From positions 124,001 through 188,000 of the IMG/VR virus record IMGVR_UViG_3300035070_002626: a DNA stretch of 64,000 bases; one strand, given 5' to 3'. Below, piece after piece: positions 4,851 to 45,090 of the stretch (position 1 is its first letter; the number at the start of each line of letters is the position of its first letter). The notes beneath the pieces are model-generated. The model ran no database searches and was not told the origin of the DNA. It saw only the letters and a list, made by a program, of their open reading frames with translations. Made by a program: the position numbers and the translations under genes.

Positions 4851-5374
4851 TCTATAACTCCAGTTATTTGCAAACTGTATCTGTGCGTTTTACCAACGTT
4901 AGCAGCTAGGTGTTCAGTGTCATTTTGCCATATAAAATAATCACCAGCGTGCCATTTTGTTTGTGGTTCACCATCTATTTCAAACACGTGTCCACTTTCC
5001 CAGTCTTTCATAAAGAAGATTGCTCTATGTATAGTATCAGCATCATTGATATTGTGATACTTGATAAAACGTGCATAAGTGTCACTGTGTGTAGGGAGAC
5101 AGCAACCAGGTCCCATGCGGTATACACTCCAAGAAAAGTGTTTCCATGGTAATACAGTTTGAATTTTATCCATCCATTTGGGTGCAGGATTACGCATGTC
5201 ATACATGTCGCCTGTAAACTTGGTTTGTGTATAACCTAACTCTCTCCACTCAGCCAAGCTTACAGGATCATTGAAAGGCTCGTTGCTATAAGGCAAGTCT
5301 TCAAATGCATTTTGCCAGACTGGTGCTGTGCTGCCCTGCCACCACTTTTTACTAGGCTTGTCTTGTGTTTCCAT
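4847..5374 (-). CDS. 2OG-Fe(II) oxygenase / cupin-fold protein
   Basis: HSD (HxD) plus distal H (EHLAANVG) and RYSLQITG. Confidence 0.75.
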   Translation of the reverse strand: METQDKPSKKWWQGSTAPVWQNAFEDLPYSNEPFNDPVSLAEWRELGYTQTKFTGDMYDMRNPAPKWMDKIQTVLPWKHFSWSVYRMGPGCCLPTHSDTYARFIKYHNINDADTIHRAIFFMKDWESGHVFEIDGEPQTKWHAGDYFIWQNDTEHLAANVGKTHRYSLQITGVIE

Positions 5375-6584
5375 AATGTACTACTTCTATATCTTTCATT
5401 GTTTTAGGCAAGCGTCTCCATGGATCAACCACTGTGCTTCCACTAGGAAGCGGGCAATAGAAACTGTCGTCGCGAACATCACCGGTATAGCCGTATGTAA
5501 TGAATCTATTGTGTGCCATAAGCACTACACTTGCTTCATCAATACTTTCAACTACGTTGGTTTGATCATCAGCAAGTGGGTCTAAGTAAACCACACTATG
5601 CCCGAGTTCTTCTACATACCATCCAATTAATGTGCTGTAACTGCCAATACAAAACGGAACATCGGGTTTATAAGCTTTACCGTGAATTACAATTGGGCGA
5701 CCTTTACTGTGTTCAACTAAAAAATGTGCTAGATTTTTTGCTTGTACTTCCCTGGCACCCATGATTGTGTTAAACATATCATACCCAACATCATACTCTT
5801 CGGCCAGCCAACGCAGTGCAATATTATCACGTGGATGACATGCACCTGCATCCCCCATGCCTGCTGTCATGTATTTAGGACCCATGATACGCATTGTACT
5901 TTGTGCCAGTGCATCAGTAACAACATCAACATCAATGTTGCCAATTTTCATTGCAAAGTCTTGAATCATGTTAACCAAGCCAACTTTTGCACTAATAAAT
6001 GTGTTGTAGAAGATTTTAATTGCTTCGCACTCGTCCCATGTGCCTGTAACATATCTTGGATTATTCAGCATAAGTGGGCGATACAAATTAATAAGATCTC
6101 TCATCTCACTTGGGTCACCTGTTTCGGTGCCAATCATAACCATTTCTGGATTAGCAAAATCCCACTTAACACTACCCATTGCAATCAGATATGGATTGTA
6201 CAAGAATTGGTGGTTGCTGTCCAGCAAACTATAAAACTCACGGCGTGTTGTGCCCGGTAGTACTGTCGAAATAAGAACAACACGTTTTGGTTCTGTAGCA
6301 TGCTCGTTTACTAAACGGATAGCATCTTTAACGGCATCGTGGCCAAAGTCTTTTGGCTCCATGTGTGCACTGGGCGTACTACCATCGTACCCTTCTGCAT
6401 GTGGAGTTTGTACAGCAATAAAAATCCAATCGCTGTTGGTAATCATTTCTTCAGGGGTATTACAAACTTTTACCCTGTCGCTTGTGCGTGGGTAAATATC
6501 ATAACCACACACGTTATACTTTTCTGCCATTACTTCCGCACAATCGAGCCCAAGTTTGCCGAGCCCAATAAATCCAATATTCAT
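5352..6584 (-). CDS. ugd: UDP-glucose/GDP-mannose dehydrogenase family
   Basis: GLGKLG Rossmann motif, AVQTP, STVLPGT, IKIFYN, GACHPRD catalytic Cys, GKAYKP. Confidence 0.92.
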   Translation of the reverse strand: MNIGFIGLGKLGLDCAEVMAEKYNVCGYDIYPRTSDRVKVCNTPEEMITNSDWIFIAVQTPHAEGYDGSTPSAHMEPKDFGHDAVKDAIRLVNEHATEPKRVVLISTVLPGTTRREFYSLLDSNHQFLYNPYLIAMGSVKWDFANPEMVMIGTETGDPSEMRDLINLYRPLMLNNPRYVTGTWDECEAIKIFYNTFISAKVGLVNMIQDFAMKIGNIDVDVVTDALAQSTMRIMGPKYMTAGMGDAGACHPRDNIALRWLAEEYDVGYDMFNTIMGAREVQAKNLAHFLVEHSKGRPIVIHGKAYKPDVPFCIGSYSTLIGWYVEELGHSVVYLDPLADDQTNVVESIDEASVVLMAHNRFITYGYTGDVRDDSFYCPLPSGSTVVDPWRRLPKTMKDIEVVHYGNTRQA

Positions 6585-6603: not shown

Positions 6604-7806
6604 ATGTCTATCCCTACTAATAATTTATACGATTTTGTCCACCAGGTGTTAGAAAGTAAGTTCTTTCTTCGCTACTTTTATCCCTGGGGAGAAAAAGATA
6701 TAGAAAATATAATCGAACACCCTAACAACAAGTTCAGTGCAGATATTGCCAAGACACTAATTGCTGCTAATTTAAATCCTGTACGGTATAGCCCAGTGAT
6801 ATTATGCCACGACCAAGAGCCGTTAGACTTTGATTTATATAGTGATCATATGCTGAAACTACTAGAGGACGACGATATACAACCATTGGTTAAGTACGGG
6901 GTTAAAGATTTGAATCTAAGATGGCGTTTTCCAAGAAGTAGTACTAATACTTGGATATTATTACATAGCGAATTAAATAGCGATCAAGTACAAAAATATA
7001 ATTATACAGGATTATTTAAATGTGCATACTGGTGGAGTCATGCGTTAATTGCCCGAGATTGGTATAGATTTGCACAGCATGACCAACAGCTCAACCAAAT
7101 CTTACCTAAAATTGCTAACTGGCTAGTTTATGCCAGGGCTACATCTGGAAAACGTGAGTACCGACAAGGTTTTCTAGAAAAGCTCAAAACTGTAAAGAAT
7201 GTGCAGTTCGGCAGTATCGACACAAGTAAAGTAGTTAGTAGTAATAGCAGTGCCGAGTACGAATGGAAAGACTATACACAAACAAATTGCAGTATTATAT
7301 TGGAAACTGTGTACGACGATCGCATACACTTAACCGAAAAGACACTGCGGCCAATTGCTTGCGGGCACCCTTTTATGATTCTTAGCGGTCCAGGGACATT
7401 AGCGTATTTGCGCAAGATGGGATTTAATACGTTTAGCCCACTTATTGACGAAAGTTACGATCTCGAAACAGATCCAGCTAAACGTATGCAAATGGTACTA
7501 GAAGAAATGCATAGGATCAACAACCTAAGCGACAGGTATCAACGATATATCTGGAAAGAATGTCAGGCAATAACCACATACAACAAGAATTATTTCTTTA
7601 GTAAAAAGTTTCAACAGAAGGTGGTTGCCGAACTAACAGACAATGTAAAGGCTGTTGGCATGCCAGCAGTTGACTGGAAACTTGTACAAAAATATCATCT
7701 AATGAGGGATACTAAAGAACGGCGTACTGCACCTGATAGAGTACCAACTATAAAATTGATAAAGCATTTACGCAGTGGCGGCACGATTGACAATTTTGTT
7801 ATATAA
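6604..7806 (+). CDS. Glycosyltransferase-like protein (GT10/GT-B-type C-terminus)
   Basis: ILET...LTEKTLRPI..GHPF...LRKMGFNTF..IDESYD motif typical of phage GT10-like proteins. Confidence 0.6.
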   Translation: MSIPTNNLYDFVHQVLESKFFLRYFYPWGEKDIENIIEHPNNKFSADIAKTLIAANLNPVRYSPVILCHDQEPLDFDLYSDHMLKLLEDDDIQPLVKYGVKDLNLRWRFPRSSTNTWILLHSELNSDQVQKYNYTGLFKCAYWWSHALIARDWYRFAQHDQQLNQILPKIANWLVYARATSGKREYRQGFLEKLKTVKNVQFGSIDTSKVVSSNSSAEYEWKDYTQTNCSIILETVYDDRIHLTEKTLRPIACGHPFMILSGPGTLAYLRKMGFNTFSPLIDESYDLETDPAKRMQMVLEEMHRINNLSDRYQRYIWKECQAITTYNKNYFFSKKFQQKVVAELTDNVKAVGMPAVDWKLVQKYHLMRDTKERRTAPDRVPTIKLIKHLRSGGTIDNFVI

Positions 7807-8394
7807 TTTTACATCCTTGGCAAGATAGTTATGAATCCATGCTTCGTTTTTAGTAAACCAGGCGTTATACTGTTCAGTAAACTCATCTGTGTACTTGGTG
7901 CGATTTTCGTGCATCCAAGGCAGATCAACTCTGCTGATTGTACTAAGATGTCGATGTAGGTCTCGCATTTGCCCAGTATGATAGTAATGATCAACTTTAA
8001 CTGGTGCTCTTTTAATAAACACATGTTGAGGTACAAAATGAGTTAATAGCTCTTCGTGCCGCTTAACTGGATTTTGTTTTATCAACAATTCTCCTATACT
8101 ATCAACAGTGTGTTCATAATGGAAGCGTTGTCCTAGGCCGTACGCAAACGCACTTTTTAATCTGCCGTATGGGTCACGTAATACTGTAAACTTAAAAGGG
8201 TCTTGTATGCGATAACTTTGTTCTTGTGTTTTAATTTTTCGTGCCCAATGAAGAACTGTAGTACTAACATTTTTAGGAATATTAACAAAATAAAAGTTTT
8301 CAACTCTGGGATATTCAGGCCAGCAGTAATAATCTATCACTGTGGGTTGCCAGAATTTATCCTTAATAAATAGTTTTTTTATGCCACTGAACAT
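7768..8394 (-). CDS. Sulfotransferase family 2 protein
   Basis: FVNIPKNVSTT (5'-PSB), VLRDPYGRLKSAF (3'-PB), HFVPQ. Confidence 0.8.
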   Translation of the reverse strand: MFSGIKKLFIKDKFWQPTVIDYYCWPEYPRVENFYFVNIPKNVSTTVLHWARKIKTQEQSYRIQDPFKFTVLRDPYGRLKSAFAYGLGQRFHYEHTVDSIGELLIKQNPVKRHEELLTHFVPQHVFIKRAPVKVDHYYHTGQMRDLHRHLSTISRVDLPWMHENRTKYTDEFTEQYNAWFTKNEAWIHNYLAKDVKLYNKIVNRAATA

Positions 8395-8779: not shown

Positions 8780-9061
8780 ATGGATAGCATGTTTAAATTA
8801 ATACAAGATGTAGGCTTTCCGATTGCAGCGGCGGGCGCATCTGGGTACTTGGTTTTCCTTACAATTAAATTCATTCTCGACGGAGTTACTGGTAGTGTAC
8901 AAACATTAGCAAACATTATTAAGCAATTAGACAACCGTGTGCAAACAATGAACAACGATCTTGTCAAGATCGACGCACTGATGAGTCATACATTAGGAGT
9001 AAGACCTAATGTTGATAGAATTGCTGCCAACGAAGGTAAAGAAGATGCACGAAGGGATTAA
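8780..9061 (+). CDS. YvrJ-like TM/coiled-coil protein, paralog 1
   Basis: VGFPIAAA motif, TM segment and coiled coil. Confidence 0.65.
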   Translation: MDSMFKLIQDVGFPIAAAGASGYLVFLTIKFILDGVTGSVQTLANIIKQLDNRVQTMNNDLVKIDALMSHTLGVRPNVDRIAANEGKEDARRD

Positions 9062-9063
9062 TA

Positions 9064-9381
9064 ATGAACAATTTTGCTGATTGGGTCAACCAATATGGTT
9101 TTCCAATTGTTGCCGCAGTCGGGCTAGGCTATTTTATCTATTATATATGGGTGTGGGCAACCACAAAAGTTAAACCTGTAATAAGTGCAGCTATGGGAGA
9201 TTTGATTGCATTAGTTGATAGAATTAGAATGTTAGACAACGATATGATACGATTAAACAGCAAGTTGTCAATGGTGCTAGAACATCAAAGTAAAATAGAC
9301 AAAAAGCGTAGAGAAGAACTAGAAGAAATAGTAGCAAGATACCAGAGTAAAAGCGAATCATTTAACAGCACTGGCAAATAA
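9064..9381 (+). CDS. YvrJ-like TM/coiled-coil protein, paralog 2
   Basis: YGFPIVAA motif; aligns with the preceding ORF (DNRVQTMNNDLVKI vs VDRIRMLDNDMIRL). Confidence 0.65.
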   Translation: MNNFADWVNQYGFPIVAAVGLGYFIYYIWVWATTKVKPVISAAMGDLIALVDRIRMLDNDMIRLNSKLSMVLEHQSKIDKKRREELEEIVARYQSKSESFNSTGK

Positions 9382-9680: not shown

Positions 9681-11720
9681 TTACTTTGTCTGTGCTATGA
9701 AAACGCCATTCCAGTCTGAAGGAAGGTCTTGTGTTTTCATATACTCGCATCTTTCAATCCACATGTCGTAATATTTTTCCATTTGATGATCAAAGTGGTC
9801 ATGTAACAAGCGACATTTATCAATAGCATCATCGAATCTCTGCGCACGATAATCTTCGTGCATTTGTATGTGTTTCTTCTGCGCATTACGCCATGCCGGG
9901 GCAGTATTGTCGAGAACTGTGTAGATAGTTAATCCAACTGATTTACCTTTTACTTGTAAATCATCTACTTTAAGATAGAAGAAGTCATCCTTTGTTGCTG
10001 CGTATGTTGTTTCGCCTACAAGTAACAGGCATCCGTATTCTTTACACTTGCTTTCTACTCTTGCTGCGGTGCTCACAGCGTCTCCAAGGACATCATATGA
10101 ATGACGTTTAGTACTTCCCATCTCACCAAGGTATCCCAACCCCGTGTTGATGCCAGCGCCCATACCAACAGCAGGACGGCCATCAGGTATAATAACTTCT
10201 TCATTAAACTTCTCCACTGCACGAAGCATGTCTAAGCCACACTGTACGGCGGTCTTAGCATGTTTAGCGTCATCTATAGGCGCATTATGTATGTGCATAC
10301 TAGCATCGCCGATGTATTTAATTATCATTCCGTCCGCATCAAGCACAGGTTGTGTAATGCTGTCCATGTAGCCGTTCATAATAGTTGTCAGACCTTTTAC
10401 ATCATCACCAAAACTTTCACCCAATGGAGTAAAGCCACGCAAGTCACTAAACACAATAGAGACTTCTTTCTTTTGCCCGTCTTTAATTAGACTTGGATTT
10501 TCTTGTAGCAGTTTAACCACTGTAGGCGATGCGTATCCAGCAAACTGTTTCTTGATTGCTTGTTTCTCTAAAAACTCTTGTACAAACTTAATGCCATATA
10601 CTTGCAATGCTATTATAATAAACACTATAACAGGTGCTGTAACGTCTAAAAGAAACTTATCAGTTGCGTATGCGTATATGCTGTAAGGTATAACTCCGAC
10701 TATCATTGTAACAGTTGTAGCAAGCCCAACCCACATCCAACGACTTAATAATATAAGCAATAATCCGCCTACTACTAGTGCAACAAGCTCTGCTGTTGGT
10801 GCCCAATTGGGACGTTGTATGTTTGTACCAGCAAACATAGTGCCTAGTACTGCGGCTTGTGTAGTGCCTGCATACTGCGCTCCCAGTGCCGTGGGAACAG
10901 GGTTAGCAATGCCTGCGGCAGTAACGTCTACAATAACTACTGCACCTCCTAGATCATTAGGTAAGTCTGCAACACTTACATTCTTGCTACGTTGACTCCA
11001 ATCAATCCACACTCTACCCTCGCTGTCTGTAGGAATAACACCAAACTTTGGTATGCGCATTTTTTCTATACCAAACTGATTTAGTTTAATTTGAAAGTTG
11101 GGATCACCTGCAATGACTCGTAATGTCTCGAGCGCCAAGCTTGGATATAATGTGCCGTTTACAACAGCAACAGTTGGCATACGACGAACCACACCATCTA
11201 TCTCTGGTTCAGTGCTTACAATACCTGCACCCACTGAATTGTTTTCAAGTTCTGATATATTAGCAATAATACCACCATATGGCAAGATACGATCTAAGTA
11301 CTGAGGTTGGATAATTGCTGCGCCCGGATTAATTGGTTCGTTTACAGTTTTGTTACTAGGACGGCTAGCAAGTATAACCGGATAGTCTAACATAGTATCA
11401 GCTAGGTATGCATCTCCACCTAGTCTATCCTCTTCAGGCATCATTACATTCCACACAACCAATCCAGCACCTCTGTCGTACAAGTCTACAATAATGTCTG
11501 CGTATATGTCTCGGGGGAAAGGATACTGTCCGTACAGTTCTAGTGCTGCTTCGTCTATCTCTGCAACATAGATATTATTCTCTACTGCTGGTTGATTTAC
11601 AATAAGCTGATCAAAATAATTTAATTTAATACTTTGTATAAAGTTATTAGGTACTGCAAATGCATACACTAATGCAGCCAGTGTAATCAATGCCCACCAA
11701 GGAGATAATAATCGTTTCAT
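9681..11720 (-). CDS. CHASE2-domain class III adenylate cyclase
   Basis: N-terminal TM; CHASE2 (EIDE..L..YGQYPFPR, DGVVRR, PSLAL); 3 TMs; cyclase motifs FSDLRGFT, KYIGDA, GINTG, YDVLGDAVSTAARVES, VKGK. Confidence 0.95.
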   Translation of the reverse strand: MKRLLSPWWALITLAALVYAFAVPNNFIQSIKLNYFDQLIVNQPAVENNIYVAEIDEAALELYGQYPFPRDIYADIIVDLYDRGAGLVVWNVMMPEEDRLGGDAYLADTMLDYPVILASRPSNKTVNEPINPGAAIIQPQYLDRILPYGGIIANISELENNSVGAGIVSTEPEIDGVVRRMPTVAVVNGTLYPSLALETLRVIAGDPNFQIKLNQFGIEKMRIPKFGVIPTDSEGRVWIDWSQRSKNVSVADLPNDLGGAVVIVDVTAAGIANPVPTALGAQYAGTTQAAVLGTMFAGTNIQRPNWAPTAELVALVVGGLLLILLSRWMWVGLATTVTMIVGVIPYSIYAYATDKFLLDVTAPVIVFIIIALQVYGIKFVQEFLEKQAIKKQFAGYASPTVVKLLQENPSLIKDGQKKEVSIVFSDLRGFTPLGESFGDDVKGLTTIMNGYMDSITQPVLDADGMIIKYIGDASMHIHNAPIDDAKHAKTAVQCGLDMLRAVEKFNEEVIIPDGRPAVGMGAGINTGLGYLGEMGSTKRHSYDVLGDAVSTAARVESKCKEYGCLLLVGETTYAATKDDFFYLKVDDLQVKGKSVGLTIYTVLDNTAPAWRNAQKKHIQMHEDYRAQRFDDAIDKCRLLHDHFDHQMEKYYDMWIERCEYMKTQDLPSDWNGVFIAQTK

Positions 11721-12064
11721 GTTTTCTTTCCCATTAGTTTTGCTCGCATTGCATCTAGCTCTGCATTTCGCTGTTGTTCTTCTACGCTGGTTTGATTGGA
11801 CGAGATTTGTACTCTGGGTTTGGTACGCCTGGTTTGTACTGTACTACTGGATTGTACTTTATTTTTTGTTTGTTGTTGAACCCGCGATGGCGATGAATTT
11901 CCAATTTCTTGTCGAAGTTGTTCAATTCGGTATTTGATGTCTTGGGTTGCACTTCCGTCATACTTTTTACTTGCTGAATTTCTAAGTTGCTGATCAACTA
12001 ATTGGTTGATATTCTTACTAAAGTATTTATTTAGGACCCATTTAATCATAGTGGTATTTAACAC
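11717..12064 (-). CDS. Hypothetical basic protein within the curli/cyclase operon
   Basis: Stop overlaps the cyclase start (ATGA); Q/K-rich. Confidence 0.6.
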   Translation of the reverse strand: MLNTTMIKWVLNKYFSKNINQLVDQQLRNSASKKYDGSATQDIKYRIEQLRQEIGNSSPSRVQQQTKNKVQSSSTVQTRRTKPRVQISSNQTSVEEQQRNAELDAMRAKLMGKKT

Positions 12065-12086
12065 TATTGTGACCTAATAGTGTATT

Positions 12087-13268
12087 TTAGTATTGCGATA
12101 CACTCATGCTGCATCCGCCTGGATTAACACATGTACTTGTTATTGAGTATGACTTTGCTGTACCACTGTATTGTTCTAAACTAAAGTTGTATGCTGGTCC
12201 GTTCACACTAGATAAATTTACAGTTGCACTGTGTCCGCCACTGCCATGTTGTAGTATATCAACCAAGTTACTGTCGCCTGTTAAGTCAAGGTCAAGGCTT
12301 ACAGTGTCACTGTTTCCTAGTTGCGCTGCTTCAACATTGTTATAGTCTCCGTCTACGTCAACATTCATTGTATGAGCACCGTTTTTACGTTGTGACAATT
12401 CTACATCATTATAGTCACCTTCAATGCTTGTGGTCATTTCATGTGATGCCCAACAACAGTTCTCGGCTTGGTCAGTTTGTGCTGAATGGTATGTGTTATT
12501 GTTGCCGGTAATAGTTACATATGCGTCGTGGTCACCGGCTTCTGTTGTATCAGTATAACCATCTAATTGTTTACCTTGCCATACTTTTATATTGTTGTCA
12601 TCACCGATTAATATTAGTCTACTGAAGTTGCTTTCGCCGTTGCCACCTTGATAACTATCCACTGTGTTGTCATTGCCCGTGATTGCTGCTTCTGTTTGTT
12701 CGTATTGTGATCCATTTTGTGTTACTGTGACTGTATTCCTGTCGCCAGTGATGGGTGTATCATTGTAGCCATACACCATATGATTATTACCGTCTTGATC
12801 TACAGTTATAGAGTTGCCATCACCGTCTGCTTTGACGTATGCTAGGTTGTTATCACCGTCTTGTGTAATGGTTGCAGTTTGATCAGTATCACCACCATCT
12901 CCTAGTCCTGCGTAGGCTAAATTAGAGTCGCCAGTTTGTGTAATATCAATTCTGCAGTTGCTACCATAACAATGTGAATACGCTTCGTTATCATCGCCTG
13001 TTTGTGTTGTGTTGTTTATTCCATTATCTGCGCTCATGTACACACCTATTAGATTGATATCTCCTGTTTGAGTGTATGTAGTGCTTGCATTGTTGCCACT
13101 AATAGTCGCTTTGCCATTGGTAGGCCATCCATCACTAACAACATTGTCAGTGCCATCTTGTGTAATAGTTAAGTCAGTGTTGTTGCCAACTTGGTTGATA
13201 TAGATTTCATTTGCATAACAGATTTGGCTAAAAAAACAAGTTATTATTGTTGCAATTATTAATTTCAT
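12087..13268 (-). CDS. Long curlin-repeat protein (CsgA/CsgB-like)
   Basis: Signal peptide, then about 15 repeats of N-x-A/x-x-I-x-Q-x-G-x-x-N. Confidence 0.88.
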   Translation of the reverse strand: MKLIIATIITCFFSQICYANEIYINQVGNNTDLTITQDGTDNVVSDGWPTNGKATISGNNASTTYTQTGDINLIGVYMSADNGINNTTQTGDDNEAYSHCYGSNCRIDITQTGDSNLAYAGLGDGGDTDQTATITQDGDNNLAYVKADGDGNSITVDQDGNNHMVYGYNDTPITGDRNTVTVTQNGSQYEQTEAAITGNDNTVDSYQGGNGESNFSRLILIGDDNNIKVWQGKQLDGYTDTTEAGDHDAYVTITGNNNTYHSAQTDQAENCCWASHEMTTSIEGDYNDVELSQRKNGAHTMNVDVDGDYNNVEAAQLGNSDTVSLDLDLTGDSNLVDILQHGSGGHSATVNLSSVNGPAYNFSLEQYSGTAKSYSITSTCVNPGGCSMSVSQY

Positions 13269-14395
13269 TATTGCCTCTGATTTATATCTATAGTGTTGTT
13301 ACCAGCACCTAATAGGTAATCATATACCACTTCGTCACCTTGTTGAATATTAATACGATACCCATATTCTTGCGATAACGTCAATCTCAAATAATTATTT
13401 ACATCTACACTGGTTCTTTGTACAACCCAATCATCATTTCCTATTTGTAGCGAGATTCGTGTTGTTTCGTCGTATCCGCCGAGCTGTTGTTCAAAAAACT
13501 GCGAGTTTTGTGTTTTAAGTTCGTCTCTAAACAATGCTGCAAGAGCTAAATTTAATTGATCTATCATGTCGACTAGTAGTTCACCTAAGTAATAGTCCAC
13601 ATTATGATCTAAATCTGTTATCCAAATATCTTTAATGCTTTCTACTAACACATCTTCGTCGAGTTCATCAAACTCTAGTGCATCGATGTCAAGAAACTCA
13701 AACATTTTTCGTGTACGTTTGCGTATTTGATCTTCTTCATCTGCTATAACTGTTCGCTTGCGTAGTATTAACAAGTTGTTGATTTGGTCTTCGTTTACAC
13801 TAATAATTACCGGCTTGCTTGGAAGTTTTCCACTGTGTGAAACTTGTGTTGCTTGAAATGCTTGATTCATTACAACAAAACCTTCGTCTGTTTCTACTTT
13901 GATTTCGCCTGTTACACAATAACCTGCACTATCACAGCTAGGCAATAGAGTAACCATTGAGCCACCAATTTCATCTACAACCATAATAAAGTCTGTACCA
14001 CGCACAGAGATAGTTGCACTTGGTGTGCGCACTCTTACGTTTTGTCTTGAGTTTTTAGCAATTTGTCCACTGGCATAACGAACAGTTCCTAAGGCAGCTC
14101 GCATGTCCAAACTGCCTTTGCCTGTGTTAGGGTCGTATACAAAGTCGTCAATTACTAGTATACTATTGTCAATAACATCTACTCTGGTATCGTCAATAAA
14201 ATCTAAACGCATTTTACCACGTTTGGTTCTGGCAGTATCCATTGATTCCAGCAGAGTGCCTTTTTCGCTGCCGACTACATTGCTCTCACGCACAATTTCG
14301 CCAGACCCATCAAGTTCAGTCACTGTGCCAATACTAGCACTCGTTTGCGAGACTGTAACTAAGAGGCTGATAATTGCAAAAGCGAATATTTTCAT
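13268..14395 (-). CDS. FecR-domain periplasmic protein
   Basis: Signal peptide; IGTVTELDG, IDDFVYDP, VRTPSATISVRGTDF, GEIKV motifs. Confidence 0.9.
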   Translation of the reverse strand: MKIFAFAIISLLVTVSQTSASIGTVTELDGSGEIVRESNVVGSEKGTLLESMDTARTKRGKMRLDFIDDTRVDVIDNSILVIDDFVYDPNTGKGSLDMRAALGTVRYASGQIAKNSRQNVRVRTPSATISVRGTDFIMVVDEIGGSMVTLLPSCDSAGYCVTGEIKVETDEGFVVMNQAFQATQVSHSGKLPSKPVIISVNEDQINNLLILRKRTVIADEEDQIRKRTRKMFEFLDIDALEFDELDEDVLVESIKDIWITDLDHNVDYYLGELLVDMIDQLNLALAALFRDELKTQNSQFFEQQLGGYDETTRISLQIGNDDWVVQRTSVDVNNYLRLTLSQEYGYRINIQQGDEVVYDYLLGAGNNTIDINQRQ

Positions 14396-14396
14396 A

Positions 14397-15116
14397 TTAA
14401 TCGCTTTGCGTTATATCTACGTCTTGACTGTCGCCGTTAAATGTTGCATCAATTGTGCTACCGTCCACACCACTTTGTGTGATGTTGTACGTGCTGCCGC
14501 CTCCGGTGATGTTCAAATTAACAGTATGCCCATCCAAGCTTGCACCGCCGCTGGTATTGATAGTAATTGCATTGCCTTCGTCGCTAGCAGCACTTGTAGT
14601 TGCCAATGACGATGAATTATCTGCGACTATCGAAATTCTACTGTCAACCCCGTTTACTGTTAAGTTAGTAATATTGTTATCACCGTCCATATCAAAAGTA
14701 ATAATGCCGCCGCTTGCGTCTGCTGATTCACCAATATTAAATGTATATGTGTTATCGTCGCCGTCACCATCAATATCTAATTTTACAGTTTCACAGTTAC
14801 CTGCACCTGCTGTTCCTAAACTAGCACAATTTAGTGTTACATCATTCGAGTCTCCAAAAAAGTCCCAAGTACCTGTGTAATTTGCTCCGTTGATTATAGC
14901 ATCAATGGTGTTAGTGTTACCTGTTTGGGTAATACTAAACGTCATATCGTCGCCGTTGATTGTAAAATTGGTCGCCTGTTGGCCAATTTCGTTGTCAGTG
15001 CCATCTTGTACCAAGTCTAGATCTAAGTTATCCCCAACTTGGGTAATGTAAATATCATTTGCCAGTGAGGTACTGGATATAAACAACAAAGATAATACAT
15101 ATAAAAGTTTTTTCAT
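14397..15116 (-). CDS. Curlin-repeat protein (CsgB/CsgA-like)
   Basis: Signal peptide (SLA-N), NDIYITQVG, repeated I-x-Q-x-G-x-x-N strands. Confidence 0.85.
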   Translation of the reverse strand: MKKLLYVLSLLFISSTSLANDIYITQVGDNLDLDLVQDGTDNEIGQQATNFTINGDDMTFSITQTGNTNTIDAIINGANYTGTWDFFGDSNDVTLNCASLGTAGAGNCETVKLDIDGDGDDNTYTFNIGESADASGGIITFDMDGDNNITNLTVNGVDSRISIVADNSSSLATTSAASDEGNAITINTSGGASLDGHTVNLNITGGGSTYNITQSGVDGSTIDATFNGDSQDVDITQSD

Positions 15117-15151
15117 GTTCTGTTTGCTCCTAAGGCTTTACGCCTTTATTT

Positions 15152-15967
15152 TTATTTTTTAAATTTCCACATATTGCGCTTCTTACCCTCGAAAACCATT
15201 TCAATCACACCTTGCTCTATTGCTGCTCTTACTGCATAGTTAACTGGCTCATTAACACTATAACCAGTTTCGGCTTCTACAAGTTTTGTTCCTAAGTCGA
15301 AAAACTTAAAAATATCTGCACCCGATCTATAGCTTGCAATAGTCTTCTCAGTTGCTATGCTCATTAATACTTTACCAGTGCTAACGCTAACTAAACGCAT
15401 TACAACAGTTACAGTGTCTACTCTGTATTCTGTTTGCACACCGATACCTAAGTATCTTGCTCCTGCGCCTCCTACTGCTGTGTTGCTGTCATACCCAACA
15501 ATTCCCCCTTCAAGTATAAGCCCTGCAAACAACATTGGCTTCAACGGTGTAGGGCCGTTTGGAAGTTCTTTTTCGTACACTTCCCTCGTACTACGAATAA
15601 GTTGACGTTCTTTAATCAAATTATCCATACCTACACGCTCTACCACTTCAAACCAAACGCCATTACCTACATCTTGGAGTGCTTTAATAACCCATACTTC
15701 TGATCCTTGGGTTACTGCGCTCGACAAGTTGGCGATATTATCCGCCGGCTTACGCTGTCCTGTTGCATCTCTGAAACCGTAAACAGCGATTGTAATCTTT
15801 GGTCCATCTATTGCGGGGACCGCCGCAAGCCTATCTTCAATTGGACTAACTTGTACTATAGGAGATGTTTTACTATCTTCTAGAACTTGAAGGCTTTTGT
15901 TAGTTGCGCAGCCTTGTAATATTAGTACACTAAATCCAATTAGTAAAAACGTTTTTATCAGTTTCAT
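15152..15967 (-). CDS. csgG: Curli secretion channel CsgG
   Basis: Lipobox LQGC; AVYGFRDATGQRKP, SSAVTQG, WFEVVER, LIKERQLIR, EGGIVGYDSN, GARYLGIG, NEPVNYAVRAAIE. Confidence 0.96.
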   Translation of the reverse strand: MKLIKTFLLIGFSVLILQGCATNKSLQVLEDSKTSPIVQVSPIEDRLAAVPAIDGPKITIAVYGFRDATGQRKPADNIANLSSAVTQGSEVWVIKALQDVGNGVWFEVVERVGMDNLIKERQLIRSTREVYEKELPNGPTPLKPMLFAGLILEGGIVGYDSNTAVGGAGARYLGIGVQTEYRVDTVTVVMRLVSVSTGKVLMSIATEKTIASYRSGADIFKFFDLGTKLVEAETGYSVNEPVNYAVRAAIEQGVIEMVFEGKKRNMWKFKK

Positions 15968-16425
15968 TAGAAGTTAAACTCCCCGCCGCCGGGTATGCTA
16001 ATTTCTGTAGTTGTACCATCGTCGTCGACAATTGTTAACGTGATAGTTCCTGTTGTTGCGTCTTTAACCCAGGTTATATTTGCTCCTTCAATATCTGCTG
16101 TGCCTGTATTTGCACATGAGTCTCCGCAATTAGCAAACATAGCGTCTACCATTTGCTTACTTAGGTTAGCGTAGATTCTTGATTCCACGTTTCTAAGAAA
16201 CTTGTTTAGTGTTGTATTTTCAAGCTCGCGCTCTAAACGTGATGCCTCTGCCTCTGCCTTCTTTCGCAAGTCTTCACTGCGATTATGTTGTAACTGTTCT
16301 ACACTTAATACATGCGTAGAATATCCGTTTCCAAAATGAAACGCTGGAGATTTAAACCCCCAAACAAGATCAGCATTTGCTGACCCTGCAATTAACAGTA
16401 ATAAAACAGTGTATAAATTTTTCAT
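15967..16425 (-). CDS. csgF: Curli assembly protein CsgF
   Basis: Signal peptide, DLVWGFKSPAF..GNG N-terminus, C-terminal ITLTIVD..GTTTEISIP; directly upstream of csgG. Confidence 0.88.
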   Translation of the reverse strand: MKNLYTVLLLLIAGSANADLVWGFKSPAFHFGNGYSTHVLSVEQLQHNRSEDLRKKAEAEASRLERELENTTLNKFLRNVESRIYANLSKQMVDAMFANCGDSCANTGTADIEGANITWVKDATTGTITLTIVDDDGTTTEISIPGGGEFNF

Positions 16426-16442
16426 GGTCACCCTCTTATATG

Positions 16443-16450
16443 TATTTATA
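16443..16450 (-). promoter_or_regulatory. T4-type late promoter for the csg operon
   Basis: Exact TATAAATA just upstream of csgF. Confidence 0.6.
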
Positions 16451-16499
16451 GGACCATTTAAAATCTTTAACTGTGTTACTAATTTATTTATTATGCCTA

Positions 16500-16517
16500 G
16501 TGTAAATATTTTTACAC
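16500..16517. promoter_or_regulatory. Palindromic operator between csgF and the Fis-like gene
   Basis: GTGTAAA-TATT-TTTACAC (TGT-N10-ACA). Confidence 0.55.
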
Positions 16518-16541
16518 CTATATAATAAAATAAATATTATT

Positions 16542-16769
16542 ATGACCGAGCAAGACGTATTTTTTAACACATTTGATGAGATGTGGACCGAGAAGGAAAT
16601 ACAACATGTTTATGCAGAAAATCTCAACGAACAGTTGGAAACTCTTGAACTAAATTGTATTGAAACTGCACTGCAAGCACACAACGGTAATCGCACAAAA
16701 GCGGCCCAGTTGTTAAACATAGGCCGCACTTGTCTGCTTGCTAAAATGAAAAAATATAATCTAGTCTAA
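16542..16769 (+). CDS. Fis-family helix-turn-helix protein (stand-alone HTH_8)
   Basis: LETLELNCIETALQAHNGNRTKAAQLLNIGRTCLLAKMKKY. Confidence 0.9.
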   Translation: MTEQDVFFNTFDEMWTEKEIQHVYAENLNEQLETLELNCIETALQAHNGNRTKAAQLLNIGRTCLLAKMKKYNLV

Positions 16770-17288
16770 ATGTTTCATTAATTCGTCAATGTTAACTGGT
16801 GTATAGTCAGTATGTTCTACGCACACACACCTATATGGCCCTTCCGGGCTTGGATTACTATGAATATGCCCGTGTATATTAAGTATAGACTGTTTGCTAA
16901 ATCTACTCTTTTGGGCTATTGTATCAGGATGCTGCGAAGTGTGCGATAGTAACAACTTAGGAAAGTTTACTTCCCACATCATAATATGTTCAAAATACGG
17001 TAAAAGAGTTTTAGGGTTGTCTCGATTGCCAATGACTAGACGTTTCTTTCCAGGTAACTTAGCAAAGTTAGCAGCTAGCCATTCAGACTGATTTTCGCCG
17101 CACACTACATCTCCCAGGTGGTATACAATGTCGTCGACTTTGACAGTATCGGCCCAGTTGTCCAACATTGCTTCGTTCATCTGCTTTACTGAATCAAAAG
17201 ACCTTATCAACGAACCAGAGGCATCAAAAAATCCTAGAAGAGGTTCGTCGTTAAAATGTGTATCACTGATTACCCATGTATCGGACAT
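16761..17288 (-). CDS. Calcineurin-like metallophosphoesterase
   Basis: SDTHF, HLGD, GNRD (canonical GNHD), SH, HGHIH. Confidence 0.88.
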   Translation of the reverse strand: MSDTWVISDTHFNDEPLLGFFDASGSLIRSFDSVKQMNEAMLDNWADTVKVDDIVYHLGDVVCGENQSEWLAANFAKLPGKKRLVIGNRDNPKTLLPYFEHIMMWEVNFPKLLLSHTSQHPDTIAQKSRFSKQSILNIHGHIHSNPSPEGPYRCVCVEHTDYTPVNIDELMKHLD

Positions 17289-17307: not shown

Positions 17308-17391
17308 TGGTACTCGCACCCGGACTCGAACCGGGACGCCCTACGGCCACAGATTTTAAGTCTGTTATGTCTACCATTCCATCATGCGAGC
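17308..17391 (-). tRNA. tRNA-Leu (TAA)
   Basis: GCTCGCA/TGCGAGT acceptor stem, ACAGA-CTTAAAA-TCTGT anticodon arm, long variable arm, GGTTCGAGTCC, encoded CCA. Confidence 0.95.
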
Positions 17392-17393
17392 GT

Positions 17394-17470
17394 TGGTGCT
17401 CCCGGTAGGACTCGAACCTACGACCGACCCGTTATGAGCGGGGCGCTCTAACCAACTGAGCTACAGGAGC
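17394..17470 (-). tRNA. tRNA with CAT anticodon, probably tRNA-Ile2 (lysidine) rather than Met
   Basis: GCTCCTG..TAGCTCAGTTGGTTAGAGC..CCCG-CTCATAA-CGGG..GGTTCGAGTCC..ACCA; lacks the initiator C1:A72 mismatch and GGG:CCC anticodon stem. Confidence 0.9.
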
Positions 17471-44045: not shown

Positions 44046-45090
44046 GGAAGGTTGTATCCCATTGCAGATTTCGCCATTTGTCTAATGTGTTTGCCCAATT
44101 AATTGCTGATTCGTGCTCAGTATACGGATACTGACTTAACATGATGGATATTTCATGCTCACTTCCGTACCTTTCTTTTATCTTTTTTCGCAGTGCAGTT
44201 GGTGTTTTTTCAATTCCTATAGTACCGTGGCACGGGTGTATATTAAAATCACTAGGATCACCAAATCTATTTGTCGGCATTGTATCCCTGTGCCACTCTT
44301 TTATTTTATCATAGTAAAAGACGTTGAAAGGATTTAACGTATGTTCTATGCCAAACATAACATTTCCCGGACATTCCGCTACGGCTTTACTAACCAGCTT
44401 TTCAACTGTTGAAAATTTTGCTGGCCAACGCAAATATTCAAATTGTTTGCCTACTCCGTCGATACTACCAATCCATTTAACTAATTTAAAACGTTGCCAC
44501 TGTGCTAGTGTTTTATCCGAAGGATACAATGTGTAATTGCTGGTATACTGTATTGTGATGTCTTGTGGGTTGTTAACAAGTTCTAGTATTCGTAAATGAG
44601 TATTATTCATTAATGGTTCGCCGCCACCAAACTTGATATACCTAAGGTTTGTAGTATCCAGTGTTTCGAACCAACTTACTAGTTTGTCGTCGGTGTTTGT
44701 GCCTTTTCGATCCAACACTTTAATGTTCTCTACGCCATTTCGAACGTTTTCGTCTTGCCAGAAACTGCTACTATTGCTATCACAACTAGCACAAGCAAGA
44801 TTGCATTGCTTGGTAACTGCGATAGTGAGCATCTGCAACCCATCATTGTCTGTCATTAAATCAAAACCAGCTTGCCTGTAGCTGATTTGTTTTTGTTGTT
44901 CTTGATGTATGCAAAGACTGCAAGTTTTTGTTAAATCACCCGAGTTCCACTTTTCTCTCAACTGAGGCAAGGTTGAAAGATCGTGTACACTCTCATTGTG
45001 CGAGAAATAACAACACGGACTGACAGTAAAATCTCCGCCAAGGTTGTTGATTGCAAGTGCACTGCTCAGATGTCTACAAAATTGGGTCAT
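44014..45090 (-). CDS. Radical SAM protein with an N-terminal SPASM/twitch-like domain
   Basis: CNLACASC, GGEP, SIDG; N-terminal C..PCC..C..C. Confidence 0.9.
   Translation of the reverse strand: MTQFCRHLSSALAINNLGGDFTVSPCCYFSHNESVHDLSTLPQLREKWNSGDLTKTCSLCIHQEQQKQISYRQAGFDLMTDNDGLQMLTIAVTKQCNLACASCDSNSSSFWQDENVRNGVENIKVLDRKGTNTDDKLVSWFETLDTTNLRYIKFGGGEPLMNNTHLRILELVNNPQDITIQYTSNYTLYPSDKTLAQWQRFKLVKWIGSIDGVGKQFEYLRWPAKFSTVEKLVSKAVAECPGNVMFGIEHTLNPFNVFYYDKIKEWHRDTMPTNRFGDPSDFNIHPCHGTIGIEKTPTALRKKIKERYGSEHEISIMLSQYPYTEHESAINWANTLDKWRNLQWDTTFHEITKYFNSH

What the first reader, a model, noticed from the sequence alone, without database searches (positions are those of the whole stretch)
9681..16769. 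Phage curli operon wired to a FecR protein and a CHASE2 adenylate cyclase: candidate amyloid-fibre-to-cAMP trans-envelope signalling system
Seen: one tightly packed minus-strand operon, csgF-csgG-curlin-FecR-long curlin-ORF-CHASE2 cyclase, with mostly overlapping or abutting stops and starts, a TATAAATA late promoter and a divergent Fis-type regulator. Established: CsgG/CsgF export curli amyloid, csgF/csgG occur in some marine myophages (e.g. SAR11 pelagimyophages), and CHASE2 sensors are often encoded beside FecR-domain proteins in bacteria. Inference: the components span every envelope layer (surface fibre, OM pore, periplasmic FecR, IM cyclase). This looks like a surface-contact or assembly sensor that changes cAMP in the infected cell, for example to sense superinfection, aggregation or lysis timing, rather than a simple adhesin. 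No CsgE/CsgD is recognisable in the window.
Basis: partly seen in the sequence, partly recalled or inferred. Interest (0 to 1): 0.92.

Follow-up and report, generated by a model that had tools for sequence, protein, structure and literature searches.

The report
Phage curli module with receptor cyclase
A marine jumbo phage carries an already published, widespread gene module joining a curli-fibre secretion system to a periplasmic FecR-like protein and a membrane receptor adenylate cyclase; the genes are real and always travel together, but fibre-to-cAMP signalling is untested.

Summary
Window 9681-16431 (minus strand) encodes CsgF, CsgG, a short curlin paralog, a secreted FecR-domain protein, a long curlin-repeat protein, a 115-aa ORF and a CHASE2 class III cyclase. 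A divergent Fis-type HTH gene lies upstream. In 52 of 52 viral loci with enough flank, csgG is accompanied by FecR and the cyclase.

The cluster is not new. Wittmers et al. 2022 (PMC9599517) described T8SS+FecR+AC(+'HK') in podo- and myo-pelagiphages, and GenBank annotates it in Melnitz and HTVC008M.

New here:
- The cyclase is a CHASE2 receptor.
- Its closest bacterial homologs (0/80 near curli genes) often abut FecR-domain proteins, many of them giant cadherin/Ig/RTX adhesins.
- The phage FecR N-half has the PupR/FecR fold plus a match to the periplasmic RIN plug of RTX adhesins. Its C-half has no fold match.
- The published 'HK' genes are 93-105-aa single-TM proteins without kinase domains.
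- The carrier looks like a jumbo phage.
- 92/96 phage cyclases share a phage-specific remodelled catalytic domain in which the transition-state Asn is Ser.

Against tight FecR-CHASE2 coupling: FecR distances track CsgF/CsgG, not CHASE2. The fibre-to-cAMP reading is plausible by analogy but unproven.

The parts
15967..16431 (-). csgF: secreted curli assembly factor. The likelier start is the ATG at 16425.
   Evidence: Pfam PF10614, E 1.6e-12, covering residues 8-147. phrog_35372, E 1.8e-50. N-terminal signal-peptide-like sequence read directly. Present in 129 of 157 viral loci.
15152..15967 (-). csgG: outer-membrane lipoprotein secretion channel.
   Evidence: Pfam PF03783, E 1e-49. Full-length match to E. 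coli CsgG structures 3x2r/4uv3/6l7a, E 1.6e-50. In the constriction loop Asn is kept, Phe is replaced by Leu, and Tyr is not kept. Lipobox LQGC.
14397..15116 (-). Short curlin-repeat paralog (239 aa, secreted); candidate CsgB-like subunit.
   Evidence: Only weak direct hits: CsgA NCBIfam E 0.008, Pfam Curlin_rpt E 0.2. hhalign against the long-curlin profile gives prob 99.9%, E 5e-31. Annotated as a curlin repeat protein in Melnitz. Present in 39/39 surveyed loci.
13268..14395 (-). Secreted FecR-domain protein (375 aa). The N-half has a PupR/FecR-like and RIN-like beta fold; the C-half is phage-specific.
   Evidence: Pfam PF04773, E 2.6e-7. AlphaFold model pLDDT 77. Foldseek hits 4m0n and 6ovk_R at E about 3e-4, and 5ix9 (RIN) with prob 1.0 and TMt 0.69. 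The C-half has no fold match, best E 0.35. Bacterial relatives match only profile positions 12-198.
12087..13268 (-). Long curlin-repeat protein (393 aa, secreted); candidate major fibre subunit.
   Evidence: Pfam Curlin_rpt, E 2.5e-25, 3 stretches. CsgA/CsgB NCBIfam hits, E 3e-8 and 2e-7. Repeats of the x-T-Q-x-G-D-x-N type spaced 22-30 residues apart.
11717..12064 (-). 115-aa basic, Q/S-rich ORF of unknown function; optional cassette member.
   Evidence: No family hit. Its stop overlaps the cyclase start by 4 nt. Homologous ORFs sit directly upstream of the cyclase in about 22 loci and in 8 of 39 surveyed loci by tblastn.
9681..11720 (-). CHASE2 receptor fused to a class III nucleotide cyclase. 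The catalytic domain is the phage-specific remodelled type.
   Evidence: Pfam CHASE2 E 3.9e-30 and Guanylate_cyc E 1.3e-18. Hydrophobic segments at 4-28, 305-334 and 352-384. D426, K468, D472, R554 and K593 are conserved, but residue 550 is Ser where all 80 bacterial homologs have Asn. phrog_35576, E 1e-174.
9064..9381 (+). Small single-TM coiled-coil protein (105 aa); conserved companion of the module. This is the published 'HK'.
   Evidence: Present in 124 of 157 viral loci, while other window flanks are not shared. Lies directly upstream of csgF in Melnitz and HTVC008M. No kinase domain at E<=1. One hydrophobic segment at 12-33.
8780..9061 (+). Paralog of the previous small membrane protein (93 aa).
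   Evidence: blastp E 1e-9 to the 105-aa protein, with a shared GFPI motif followed by a TM segment. Present in 123 of 157 loci.
16542..16769 (+). Fis-type HTH protein (75 aa), divergent from csgF; an optional neighbour.
   Evidence: Pfam HTH_8, E 9.4e-14. Found in a minority of loci, always on the opposite strand: 23 upstream of csgF and 11 between csgG and the short curlin.
16443..16450 (-). TATAAATA motif upstream of csgF; promoter status unproven.
   Evidence: no enrichment in the window; present upstream of csgF in 18 of 99 distinct loci, with several at a fixed distance of 19-21 nt.

Best explanation
This is a copy, in a probable jumbo phage, of a mobile eight-gene phage module that is already published. 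Its members are two small membrane proteins, CsgF, CsgG, two secreted curlin-repeat proteins, a secreted FecR-domain protein and a CHASE2 receptor cyclase.

Most likely mechanism:
- During infection the Sec-exported curlins pass through the CsgG/CsgF outer-membrane channel and form curli-like fibres on a host that has no curli genes of its own.
- The inner-membrane cyclase reads a periplasmic or envelope cue through its CHASE2 domain and changes a cyclic nucleotide, most likely cAMP, in the cytoplasm.
- The FecR/RIN-like periplasmic protein is the probable coupling element between the secretion apparatus or fibre and the CHASE2 domain.
- In effect the phage version replaces the giant adhesin found beside homologous bacterial cyclases with a curli fibre.

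Shown here: gene identities, predicted topologies, strict co-occurrence, the bacterial FecR-cyclase synteny, the fold of the FecR N-half, and the remodelled catalytic domain.

Inferred: fibre formation, the identity of the signal, any FecR-CHASE2 contact, the nucleotide produced, and the benefit to the phage.
For: - Domain calls.
- Curlin paralogy.
- Full-length CsgG homology to solved structures.
- Signal peptides, lipobox and TM pattern.
- 52/52 co-occurrence from CsgG anchors and 39/39 from cyclase anchors.
- The module is shared while the window's other flanks are not.
- The same order is annotated in Melnitz and HTVC008M and described by Wittmers 2022, with metatranscriptome expression.
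- Around the closest bacterial cyclases, 26 of 51 loci with full flanks have a FecR-domain ORF, 12 of them abutting the cyclase and 17 with ORFs of 900 aa or more.
- Four of the eight bacterial FecR partners scanned carry Cadherin_4, Big_9, RTX or BapA_N domains.
- The FecR N-half folds like the PupR cell-surface signalling domain and matches the periplasmic RIN plug of MpIBP.
- S. meliloti NsrA (outer membrane) signalling to CyaK/CyaD (CHASE2 cyclases) is an experimental precedent, and deleting CHASE2 makes CyaD1 constitutive.
Against: - No experiment links fibre, FecR and cyclase.
- Buchholz et al. saw no clumping in Melnitz infections.
- FecR is separated from the cyclase by the long curlin and by variable inserts; the FecR-end to cyclase-start distance is 633-3612 bp.
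- In two loci the csg block is inverted relative to the cyclase.
- FecR distance matrices track CsgF/CsgG (rho 0.69-0.77), not CHASE2 (0.40). Partial correlations with CHASE2 are about zero. This fits FecR being a T8SS accessory protein, although physical linkage could produce the same pattern.
- The catalytic domain lacks the transition-state Asn in 92 of 96 phage copies, so activity and product are uncertain.
- A crude motif search found no cyclic-nucleotide receptor in the window.
Confidence: 0.4

Rival explanations
1. There are two independent functions that merely share a mobile island. FecR is a periplasmic accessory factor of the T8SS, standing in for the missing CsgE/CsgH-type chaperone or gate of the CsgG channel. 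The CHASE2 cyclase separately senses some unrelated envelope or environmental cue to reprogram the host.
For: - FecR (both halves) co-varies with CsgF/CsgG (rho 0.69-0.77) and not with CHASE2 after controlling for shared history.
- The cyclase forms its own recombining block: CHASE2 and TM distances correlate at rho 0.84, and catalytic domains are swapped.
- Variable genes are inserted between the long curlin and the cyclase.
- The csg block is inverted relative to the cyclase in L144 and L160.
- The FecR C-half is phage-specific.
- The phage systems lack CsgE.
Against: - Cyclase and FecR co-occur with csgG in 52/52 loci.
- FecR-domain proteins abut the homologous cyclases in bacteria that have no curli genes nearby, so the FecR-cyclase link predates the phage module.
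Confidence: 0.3
2. The cyclase and FecR regulate the T8SS rather than report on it. cAMP made by the phage cyclase switches on expression or activity of the curli genes, as proposed by Wittmers et al. by analogy with cAMP/CsgD control in enterobacteria.
For: - Published proposal.
- An optional Fis-type HTH regulator lies divergent to csgF in the window and in about 30 loci.
Against: - No CsgD, CRP or cyclic-nucleotide-binding protein is found in the module.
- FecR here is a secreted protein without the cytoplasmic anti-sigma domain, so it cannot act on transcription directly.
- The cyclase's sensor faces the periplasm, so information flows inward.
- The genes are tightly packed on one strand in the window, consistent with co-transcription.
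Confidence: 0.12
3. The CsgG/CsgF pore has been repurposed as a gated channel for lysis timing or for macromolecule uptake, and no fibres are made (Buchholz et al. 2022; Zaragoza-Solas et al. 2020).
For: - Published hypotheses.
- No clumping was seen in Melnitz cultures.
- The CsgG constriction residues are only partly conserved.
Against: - Both papers assumed that csgA/B are missing. In fact two secreted curlin-repeat proteins are present and strictly conserved, as Wittmers et al. also found.
- CsgF, which is needed for fibre nucleation and not for the pore, is conserved.
Confidence: 0.1
4. The curlin-repeat proteins are virion fibres or decorations rather than host-surface fibres.
For: Repeat-rich proteins are common in phage fibres.
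Against: - Both curlins, FecR and CsgF begin with Sec-type signal peptides, and CsgG has a lipobox. They are therefore exported from the cytoplasm, where virions assemble.
- The module lies away from structural genes and is mobile between unrelated phage backbones.
Confidence: 0.03

Closest known systems
Pelagiphage T8SS-FecR-adenylate cyclase cluster (Wittmers et al. 2022, mSystems, PMC9599517). Annotated in Methylophilales phage Melnitz MZ577097 and Pelagibacter phage HTVC008M KC465899.
   Same: - Same genes in the same order: ('HK' x1-2)-CsgF-CsgG-curlin-FecR-curlin-AC.
- Protein identity to Melnitz/HTVC008M: 47-53% for CsgG, 43-45% for FecR, 53%/34% for the cyclase.
   Different: - The carrier here looks like a roughly 300-kb jumbo phage. 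Its helicase and a structural protein resemble those of PA5oct, Atu_ph07 and XacN1-type phages.
- The two small genes are convergent with the cyclase instead of preceding csgF.
- An extra 115-aa ORF and a Fis-type HTH gene are present.
- The paper does not mention CHASE2, and its 'HK' label is not supported here.
Alphaproteobacterial-type curli system (type VIII secretion: CsgG, CsgF, CsgA/B, without CsgC/D/E).
   Same: CsgG lipoprotein, CsgF, and two secreted curlin-repeat proteins.
   Different: - Encoded by a phage.
- A FecR protein is inserted between the two curlin genes, and a receptor cyclase is attached.
- None of the 80 closest bacterial cyclase loci has curli genes within 10 kb.
- Wittmers et al. 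state that FecR and AC are not within bacterial T8SS operons.
Bacterial FecR-domain protein paired with a CHASE2 sensor (Burkholderia BiofilmReg operon LysM-FecR + CHASE2 histidine kinase, PMC5192318), and the FecR-adhesin + CHASE2 cyclase pairs found here in Bradyrhizobium and other Alphaproteobacteria.
   Same: - A periplasmic FecR domain is encoded next to a CHASE2 membrane sensor.
- The cyclases are full-length homologs at about 30% identity, including the C-terminal extension.
   Different: - In bacteria the FecR domain is fused to LysM or to giant cadherin/Ig/RTX adhesin repeats and usually abuts the sensor gene.
- In the phage it is a 375-aa protein with a novel C-half, separated from the cyclase by a curlin gene.
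Sinorhizobium meliloti NsrA with CyaK/CyaD1/CyaD2 signalling (PMC7529298, PMC5498481).
   Same: An outer-membrane component is required for signal transduction to inner-membrane CHASE2 adenylate cyclases. CHASE2 holds the cyclase off until signalled.
   Different: - The outer-membrane component there is a beta-barrel receptor, not a secretion channel or fibre.
- The output is read by the CRP-like Clr protein; no such receptor was identified here.
FecR/PupR-type cell-surface signalling anti-sigma factors (PDB 6ovk).
   Same: The fold of the periplasmic domain.
   Different: - No cytoplasmic anti-sigma domain or TM anchor; the phage protein has only a signal peptide.
- No ECF sigma factor or TonB-dependent transducer in the module.
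- The 'iron regulator' label used in the literature is therefore not warranted.

Membership tests
Phage T8SS-FecR-AC module (Wittmers 2022) | Adjacent csgF and csgG followed by a curlin-repeat gene. | tested here: met
Phage T8SS-FecR-AC module (Wittmers 2022) | FecR-domain gene after the first curlin, then a second curlin and an adenylate cyclase. | tested here: met
   The same order is seen in Melnitz and HTVC008M.
Phage T8SS-FecR-AC module (Wittmers 2022) | One or two small 'HK' genes accompanying the cluster. | tested here: met
   Homologs at 8780-9061 and 9064-9381, present in 123-124 of 157 loci. Here they are convergent with the cyclase rather than upstream of csgF. They lack kinase domains.
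Phage T8SS-FecR-AC module (Wittmers 2022) | Carried on a phage genome. | tested here: met
   100% match to IMG/VR contig 3300035070_002626. Phage helicase, RNR and tail-spike-like proteins are present.
Curli / type VIII secretion system | CsgG-family outer-membrane lipoprotein channel. | tested here: met
   PF03783, E 1e-49. Full-length alignment to E. coli CsgG structures. Lipobox present.
Curli / type VIII secretion system | Secreted CsgF. | tested here: met
   PF10614, E 1.6e-12, above the gathering score. No direct PDB sequence hit.
Curli / type VIII secretion system | Secreted subunits built of curlin repeats. | tested here: met
   Long protein: Curlin_rpt E 2.5e-25. Short protein: met only through profile homology to the long one.
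Curli / type VIII secretion system | Formation of extracellular amyloid fibres. | not testable with these tools
   Needs Congo red/ThT staining, electron microscopy or cryo-ET.
CHASE2 receptor class III adenylate cyclase | CHASE2 domain between an N-terminal TM segment and a TM bundle, followed by a cytoplasmic cyclase domain. | tested here: met
CHASE2 receptor class III adenylate cyclase | Two metal-binding Asp residues, the adenine-specifying Lys with Asp/Ser/Thr, and the catalytic Arg. | tested here: met
   D426, D472, K468, D543 and R554.
CHASE2 receptor class III adenylate cyclase | Transition-state Asn (the 'VN' of the GDxVNxAxR motif). | tested here: not met
   Ser550 in the window and in 92 of 96 phage copies; Asn in 80 of 80 bacterial homologs. 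The alignment to solved cyclases confirms the column.
CHASE2 receptor class III adenylate cyclase | cAMP synthesis. | not testable with these tools
   Needs an enzyme assay.
FecR/FecI/FecA-type cell-surface signalling | FecR-type periplasmic domain fold. | tested here: met
   Foldseek hits 4m0n and 6ovk_R, prob 1.0. PF04773.
FecR/FecI/FecA-type cell-surface signalling | N-terminal cytoplasmic anti-sigma domain and a membrane anchor. | tested here: not met
   The protein starts with a cleavable-type signal peptide, and the beta-rich domain begins at residue 23.
FecR/FecI/FecA-type cell-surface signalling | Partner ECF sigma factor and TonB-dependent transducer nearby. | tested here: not met
   None among the module genes or their immediate neighbours. 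The rest of the window was not scanned exhaustively.

The most novel reading that the evidence does not exclude
The module is an adhesin- or fibre-coupled receptor system with two linked features. First, a RIN/FecR-like periplasmic domain, fused to giant RTX-type adhesins in Alphaproteobacteria and free-standing beside a curli fibre in phages, relays the state of a surface filament to a CHASE2 cyclase. Second, phages have evolved their own catalytic domain (Asn to Ser, Ser/Thr to Asp, and two new His residues beside the metal site), whose changed chemistry gives a product or regulation different from ordinary cAMP synthesis. Infected SAR11-type, OM43-type and other marine cells would then sense contact, aggregation or superinfection through a virus-built organelle.
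Probability: 0.15. Interest if true: 0.85.

Novelty: new member of a known kind. Interest (0 to 1): 0.45.

Why it matters
The module is among the most widespread accessory gene sets of marine phages. At least 7,750 FecR relatives and hundreds of viral loci were found here. The published survey detected it at all 65 GOV2.0 stations, at about 0.1% of assembled viral proteins.

Its function is still unknown. If it builds fibres and signals through a cyclic nucleotide, phages would be giving very abundant planktonic bacteria a surface organelle together with a sensor. That could affect aggregation, carbon export and superinfection.

The comparative results here turn a vague 'regulatory FecR/AC' label into specific, testable statements:
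- FecR is not an iron regulator but a periplasmic RIN/PupR-like module tied to surface adhesins.
- The cyclase is a CHASE2 receptor.
- The 'HK' genes are not kinases.
- Most phage copies have a remodelled active site.

The bacterial FecR-adhesin-cyclase pairs are a second, genetically tractable system for testing the same idea.

Tried and rejected
- Megablast of the region against GenBank phages found nothing. Protein-level search was needed.
- TATAAATA as a general late promoter: not enriched in the window and present upstream of csgF in only 18 of 99 loci.
- 'Histidine kinase' identity of the two small genes: no HisKA/HATPase hit at E<=1, and they are only 93-105 aa.
- FecR as an iron or anti-sigma regulator: it has no anti-sigma domain.
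- Sequence searches of FecR against the PDB gave nothing significant.
- The idea that the phage-specific C-terminal beta domain of FecR is the RIN-like plug: rejected, because the isolated C-half has no PDB fold match and 5ix9 is absent from its hit list.
- Curli genes next to the closest bacterial cyclases: 0 of 80 loci.
- A cyclic-nucleotide-binding cassette in window ORFs: none by a crude regular expression.
- Rfam elements near the module: only two tRNAs in the window.
- Inverted repeats in the csgF/HTH intergenic region: only AT-rich chance-like matches.
- Pfam on the optional gap ORF families: no assignments.
- The neighbouring metallophosphoesterase as a linked phosphodiesterase: it is near the module in only 2 of 157 loci.
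- A simple basal position of the Asn-type cyclases: rejected in favour of domain mosaicism.
It was rerun without them.

Full report
**1. What is there**

The minus strand of window 9681-16431 carries seven tightly packed genes.
- Pfam identifies CsgF (15967-16431), CsgG (15152-15967), a FecR-domain protein (13268-14395), a Curlin_rpt protein (12087-13268) and a CHASE2 + class III cyclase protein (9681-11720).
- The 239-aa protein at 14397-15116 has no hit at gathering score. Its family profile matches that of the long curlin (hhalign prob 99.9%, E 5e-31), so it is a second curlin paralog.
- The 115-aa ORF at 11717-12064 has no family hit. Homologs occupy the same position in about 22 related loci.
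- Gene junctions are overlaps of 1-4 nt or gaps of 1-35 nt.
- CsgF, both curlins and FecR begin with signal-peptide-like sequences. CsgG has a lipobox (LQGC). The cyclase has an N-terminal TM segment, the CHASE2 domain, further hydrophobic segments and then the catalytic domain.
- CsgG aligns over its full length with solved E. coli CsgG (E 1.6e-50). The constriction loop is only partly conserved.
- A Fis-type HTH gene lies divergently at 16542-16769.
- TATAAATA sits just upstream of csgF. It is not enriched in the window and is found upstream of csgF in only 18 of 99 distinct related loci.

**2. It is a conserved, mobile module**

The window is 100% identical to IMG/VR contig 3300035070_002626, which is 299,910 bp long.
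- CsgG-anchored viral loci with at least 9 kb downstream: 39/39 carry the short curlin, FecR and the cyclase.
- Cyclase-anchored loci with at least 9 kb upstream: 39/39 carry CsgF, CsgG and FecR.
- A second survey anchored on the HTVC008M CsgG gave 13/13.
- Two small paralogous genes at 8780-9061 and 9064-9381 are as widely conserved as the cassette (123-124 of 157 loci). The rest of the window's flanks are not shared.
- In Melnitz and HTVC008M these two genes sit directly upstream of csgF. In the window they are convergent with the cyclase.
- The Fis-type gene and the 115-aa ORF are optional.
- The spacing between FecR and the cyclase varies (633-3612 bp) and holds optional, mostly secreted or membrane proteins.

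**3. It is already published**

- GenBank annotates csgF, csgG, 'curlin associated repeat protein', 'FecR domain protein' and 'adenylate/guanylate cyclase' in this order in Melnitz. HTVC008M has the same arrangement.
- Zaragoza-Solas et al. 2020 and Buchholz et al. 2022 discussed the 'curli operon' but assumed that csgA/B were missing. Neither mentions the cyclase or FecR.
- Wittmers et al. 2022 explicitly described the cluster HK-CsgF-CsgG-CsgA/B-FecR-CsgA/B-AC in podo- and myo-pelagiphages. They reported its global distribution, its expression in metatranscriptomes and an alphaproteobacterial affinity. They also noted that FecR, AC and HK are not part of bacterial curli operons. That paper does not contain the word CHASE2.

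**4. What this analysis adds**

(a) *The carrier.* The replicative helicase is closest to PA5oct-like jumbo Pseudomonas phages (49% identity) and to Agrobacterium phage Atu_ph07. A large structural protein hits XacN1, Xoo-sp13, CM1 and SCTP-2, which have 309-440-kb genomes. Together with the 300-kb contig length, the module here appears to sit in a jumbo phage and not in a Kyanoviridae pelagimyophage. Other FecR homologs lie on contigs of 343-347 kb.

(b) *The 'HK' genes.* They encode proteins of 93 and 105 aa with a GFPI motif, one TM segment and a coiled coil. No kinase domain is detected.

(c) *The bacterial counterpart.* The 80 closest bacterial cyclases are about 30% identical over the full length and are mostly from Alphaproteobacteria.
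- None has CsgG, CsgF or a curlin within 10 kb.
- Among the 51 loci with full flanks, 26 have a FecR-domain ORF nearby, 12 of them abutting the cyclase and 17 with ORFs of at least 900 aa.
- Four of the eight partners scanned carry an N-terminal FecR domain followed by Cadherin_4, Big_9, RTX or BapA-prefix domains. That is the architecture of giant type-1-secreted adhesins.
- These bacterial proteins match only the N-terminal half of the phage FecR protein.

(d) *The FecR structure.* The AlphaFold model (pLDDT 77) has a confident beta-rich N-half, a poorly defined helical linker and a confident C-terminal beta domain.
- Foldseek matches the N-half to the periplasmic domains of anti-sigma factors, including PupR (4m0n, 6ovk; E about 3e-4).
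- It also matches 5ix9 (prob 1.0, TMt 0.69, 28% identity over 61 columns). 5ix9 is RIN, the periplasmic plug that retains the giant adhesin MpIBP in its outer-membrane pore, and it was the template for LapA's retention module.
- The C-half modelled alone has no fold match. It is therefore phage-specific, and the RIN-like match belongs to the N-half.

(e) *The cyclase active site.* Both metal Asp residues, the adenine-specifying Lys, the catalytic Arg and the KGK Lys are invariant.
- The transition-state Asn is Ser in 92 of 96 distinct phage copies, including the window and Melnitz. It is Asn in all 80 bacterial homologs.
- This change co-varies with Ser/Thr to Asp at the base-specifying position and with two new His residues next to the second metal Asp.
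- Alignment to solved cyclases confirms the columns.
- Domain trees show that all phage CHASE2 domains form one clade. The Ser-type catalytic domains form a separate long-stemmed clade (support 0.999). The four Asn-type catalytic domains fall outside it, and three of them are nearest to each other and then to a SAR86 sequence.
- The phage cyclases are therefore mosaics, and the remodelled catalytic domain is a phage lineage.

**5. Mechanism**

The architecture fixes some things.
- The curlins, CsgF and FecR are exported, so they are not virion parts assembled in the cytoplasm.
- The cyclase senses on the periplasmic side and acts in the cytoplasm.
- A complete alphaproteobacterial-type T8SS is present.

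That FecR couples the T8SS or fibre to CHASE2 is an inference. It rests on the bacterial FecR-cyclase synteny, on the adhesin fusions, and on the S. meliloti precedent of an outer-membrane protein feeding CHASE2 cyclases.

Against a specific FecR-CHASE2 partnership:
- Across 51 non-redundant loci, FecR distances follow CsgF/CsgG (rho 0.69-0.77) and not CHASE2 (0.40). Partial correlations with CHASE2 are about zero.
- Linkage can explain this, because FecR lies next to csgG while the cyclase lies beyond a recombination-prone gap. The result equally fits FecR being a T8SS accessory factor that replaces CsgE.

I therefore rate the coupled fibre-to-nucleotide model at about 0.4, the 'two functions on one island' model at about 0.3, and the remaining rivals lower.

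**6. Verdict**

- The system itself is already in the literature, so this locus is a new member of a known kind, in a new phage backbone.
The module remains functionally unexplained, and the new comparative leads are worth testing. These are the adhesin-linked FecR-CHASE2 pairs in bacteria, the remodelled phage catalytic domain and the unsupported 'HK' and 'iron regulator' labels.

Noticed in passing
window 9681-11720 (residues 476, 478, 543, 550); loci L001-L160: In 92 of 96 distinct phage cyclases four active-site positions co-vary: Asn to Ser, Ser/Thr to Asp, Ala to His and Trp to His. All 80 bacterial homologs keep the canonical residues. Only HTVC008M, L141, L142 and L146 retain the bacterial state.
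   Followed up: yes
L146, L141, L142, L002 compared with the other viral loci: The phage cyclases are mosaics. The CHASE2 domains of the Asn-type copies nest among the Ser-type copies, but their catalytic domains fall outside the Ser-type clade. The nearest bacterial sequence for three of them is L198, from a SAR86 bacterium. This implies domain swapping by recombination.
   Followed up: yes
window 8780-9061 and 9064-9381 (+): Two tandem paralogous small proteins, each with a GFPI motif, one TM segment and a coiled coil, travel with the module in almost all loci. They correspond to the published 'histidine kinase' genes but have no kinase domains. Their function is unknown.
   Followed up: partly
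L182:5686-9843, L170:2261-9838, L199:4706-9913, L204:6257-9937: In Bradyrhizobium and other Alphaproteobacteria, giant proteins with an N-terminal FecR domain followed by cadherin-like, Big_9, RTX or BapA-prefix domains directly abut homologs of the phage CHASE2 cyclase. I did not find this adhesin-cyclase pairing described in the papers I searched.
   Followed up: partly
window 45087-46493 and 24153-26939; whole contig: The helicase is closest to PA5oct-like jumbo phages and to Atu_ph07. A 928-aa structural protein hits XacN1, Xoo-sp13, CM1 and SCTP-2. The contig is 299.9 kb. The carrier is therefore probably a marine jumbo phage and not a pelagimyophage.
   Followed up: partly
between the long curlin and the cyclase in L105, L116, L119, L124, L145 and others: The gap holds optional gene families: a roughly 160-aa protein with a C-terminal TM segment (23 loci), a 480-666-aa secreted protein rich in Gly/Ser/Thr/Asn (18 loci), a roughly 115-aa protein (16 loci) and a roughly 130-aa secreted protein (13 loci). 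None has a Pfam assignment.
   Followed up: partly
L144, L160 (also L148): The csgF-to-FecR block is inverted relative to the cyclase, so the two are divergent rather than in one operon.
   Followed up: no
window 17308-17470 (-): tRNA-Leu(TAA) and tRNA-Met(CAT) genes lie just beyond the metallophosphoesterase gene at 16761-17288.
   Followed up: no
window 5352-6584 (-) and 7768-8394 (-): A UDP-glucose dehydrogenase homolog (phrog_9148, E 8.5e-87) and a weak sulfotransferase-like ORF lie a few kb from the module. They may be further cell-surface-modifying genes in the same region.
   Followed up: no
window 13268-13798 (FecR residues 200-375): The C-terminal half of the FecR protein is a helical hairpin followed by a confidently predicted seven-stranded beta domain. 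It is conserved in phages, has no PDB fold match and has no counterpart in the bacterial FecR partners.
   Followed up: yes
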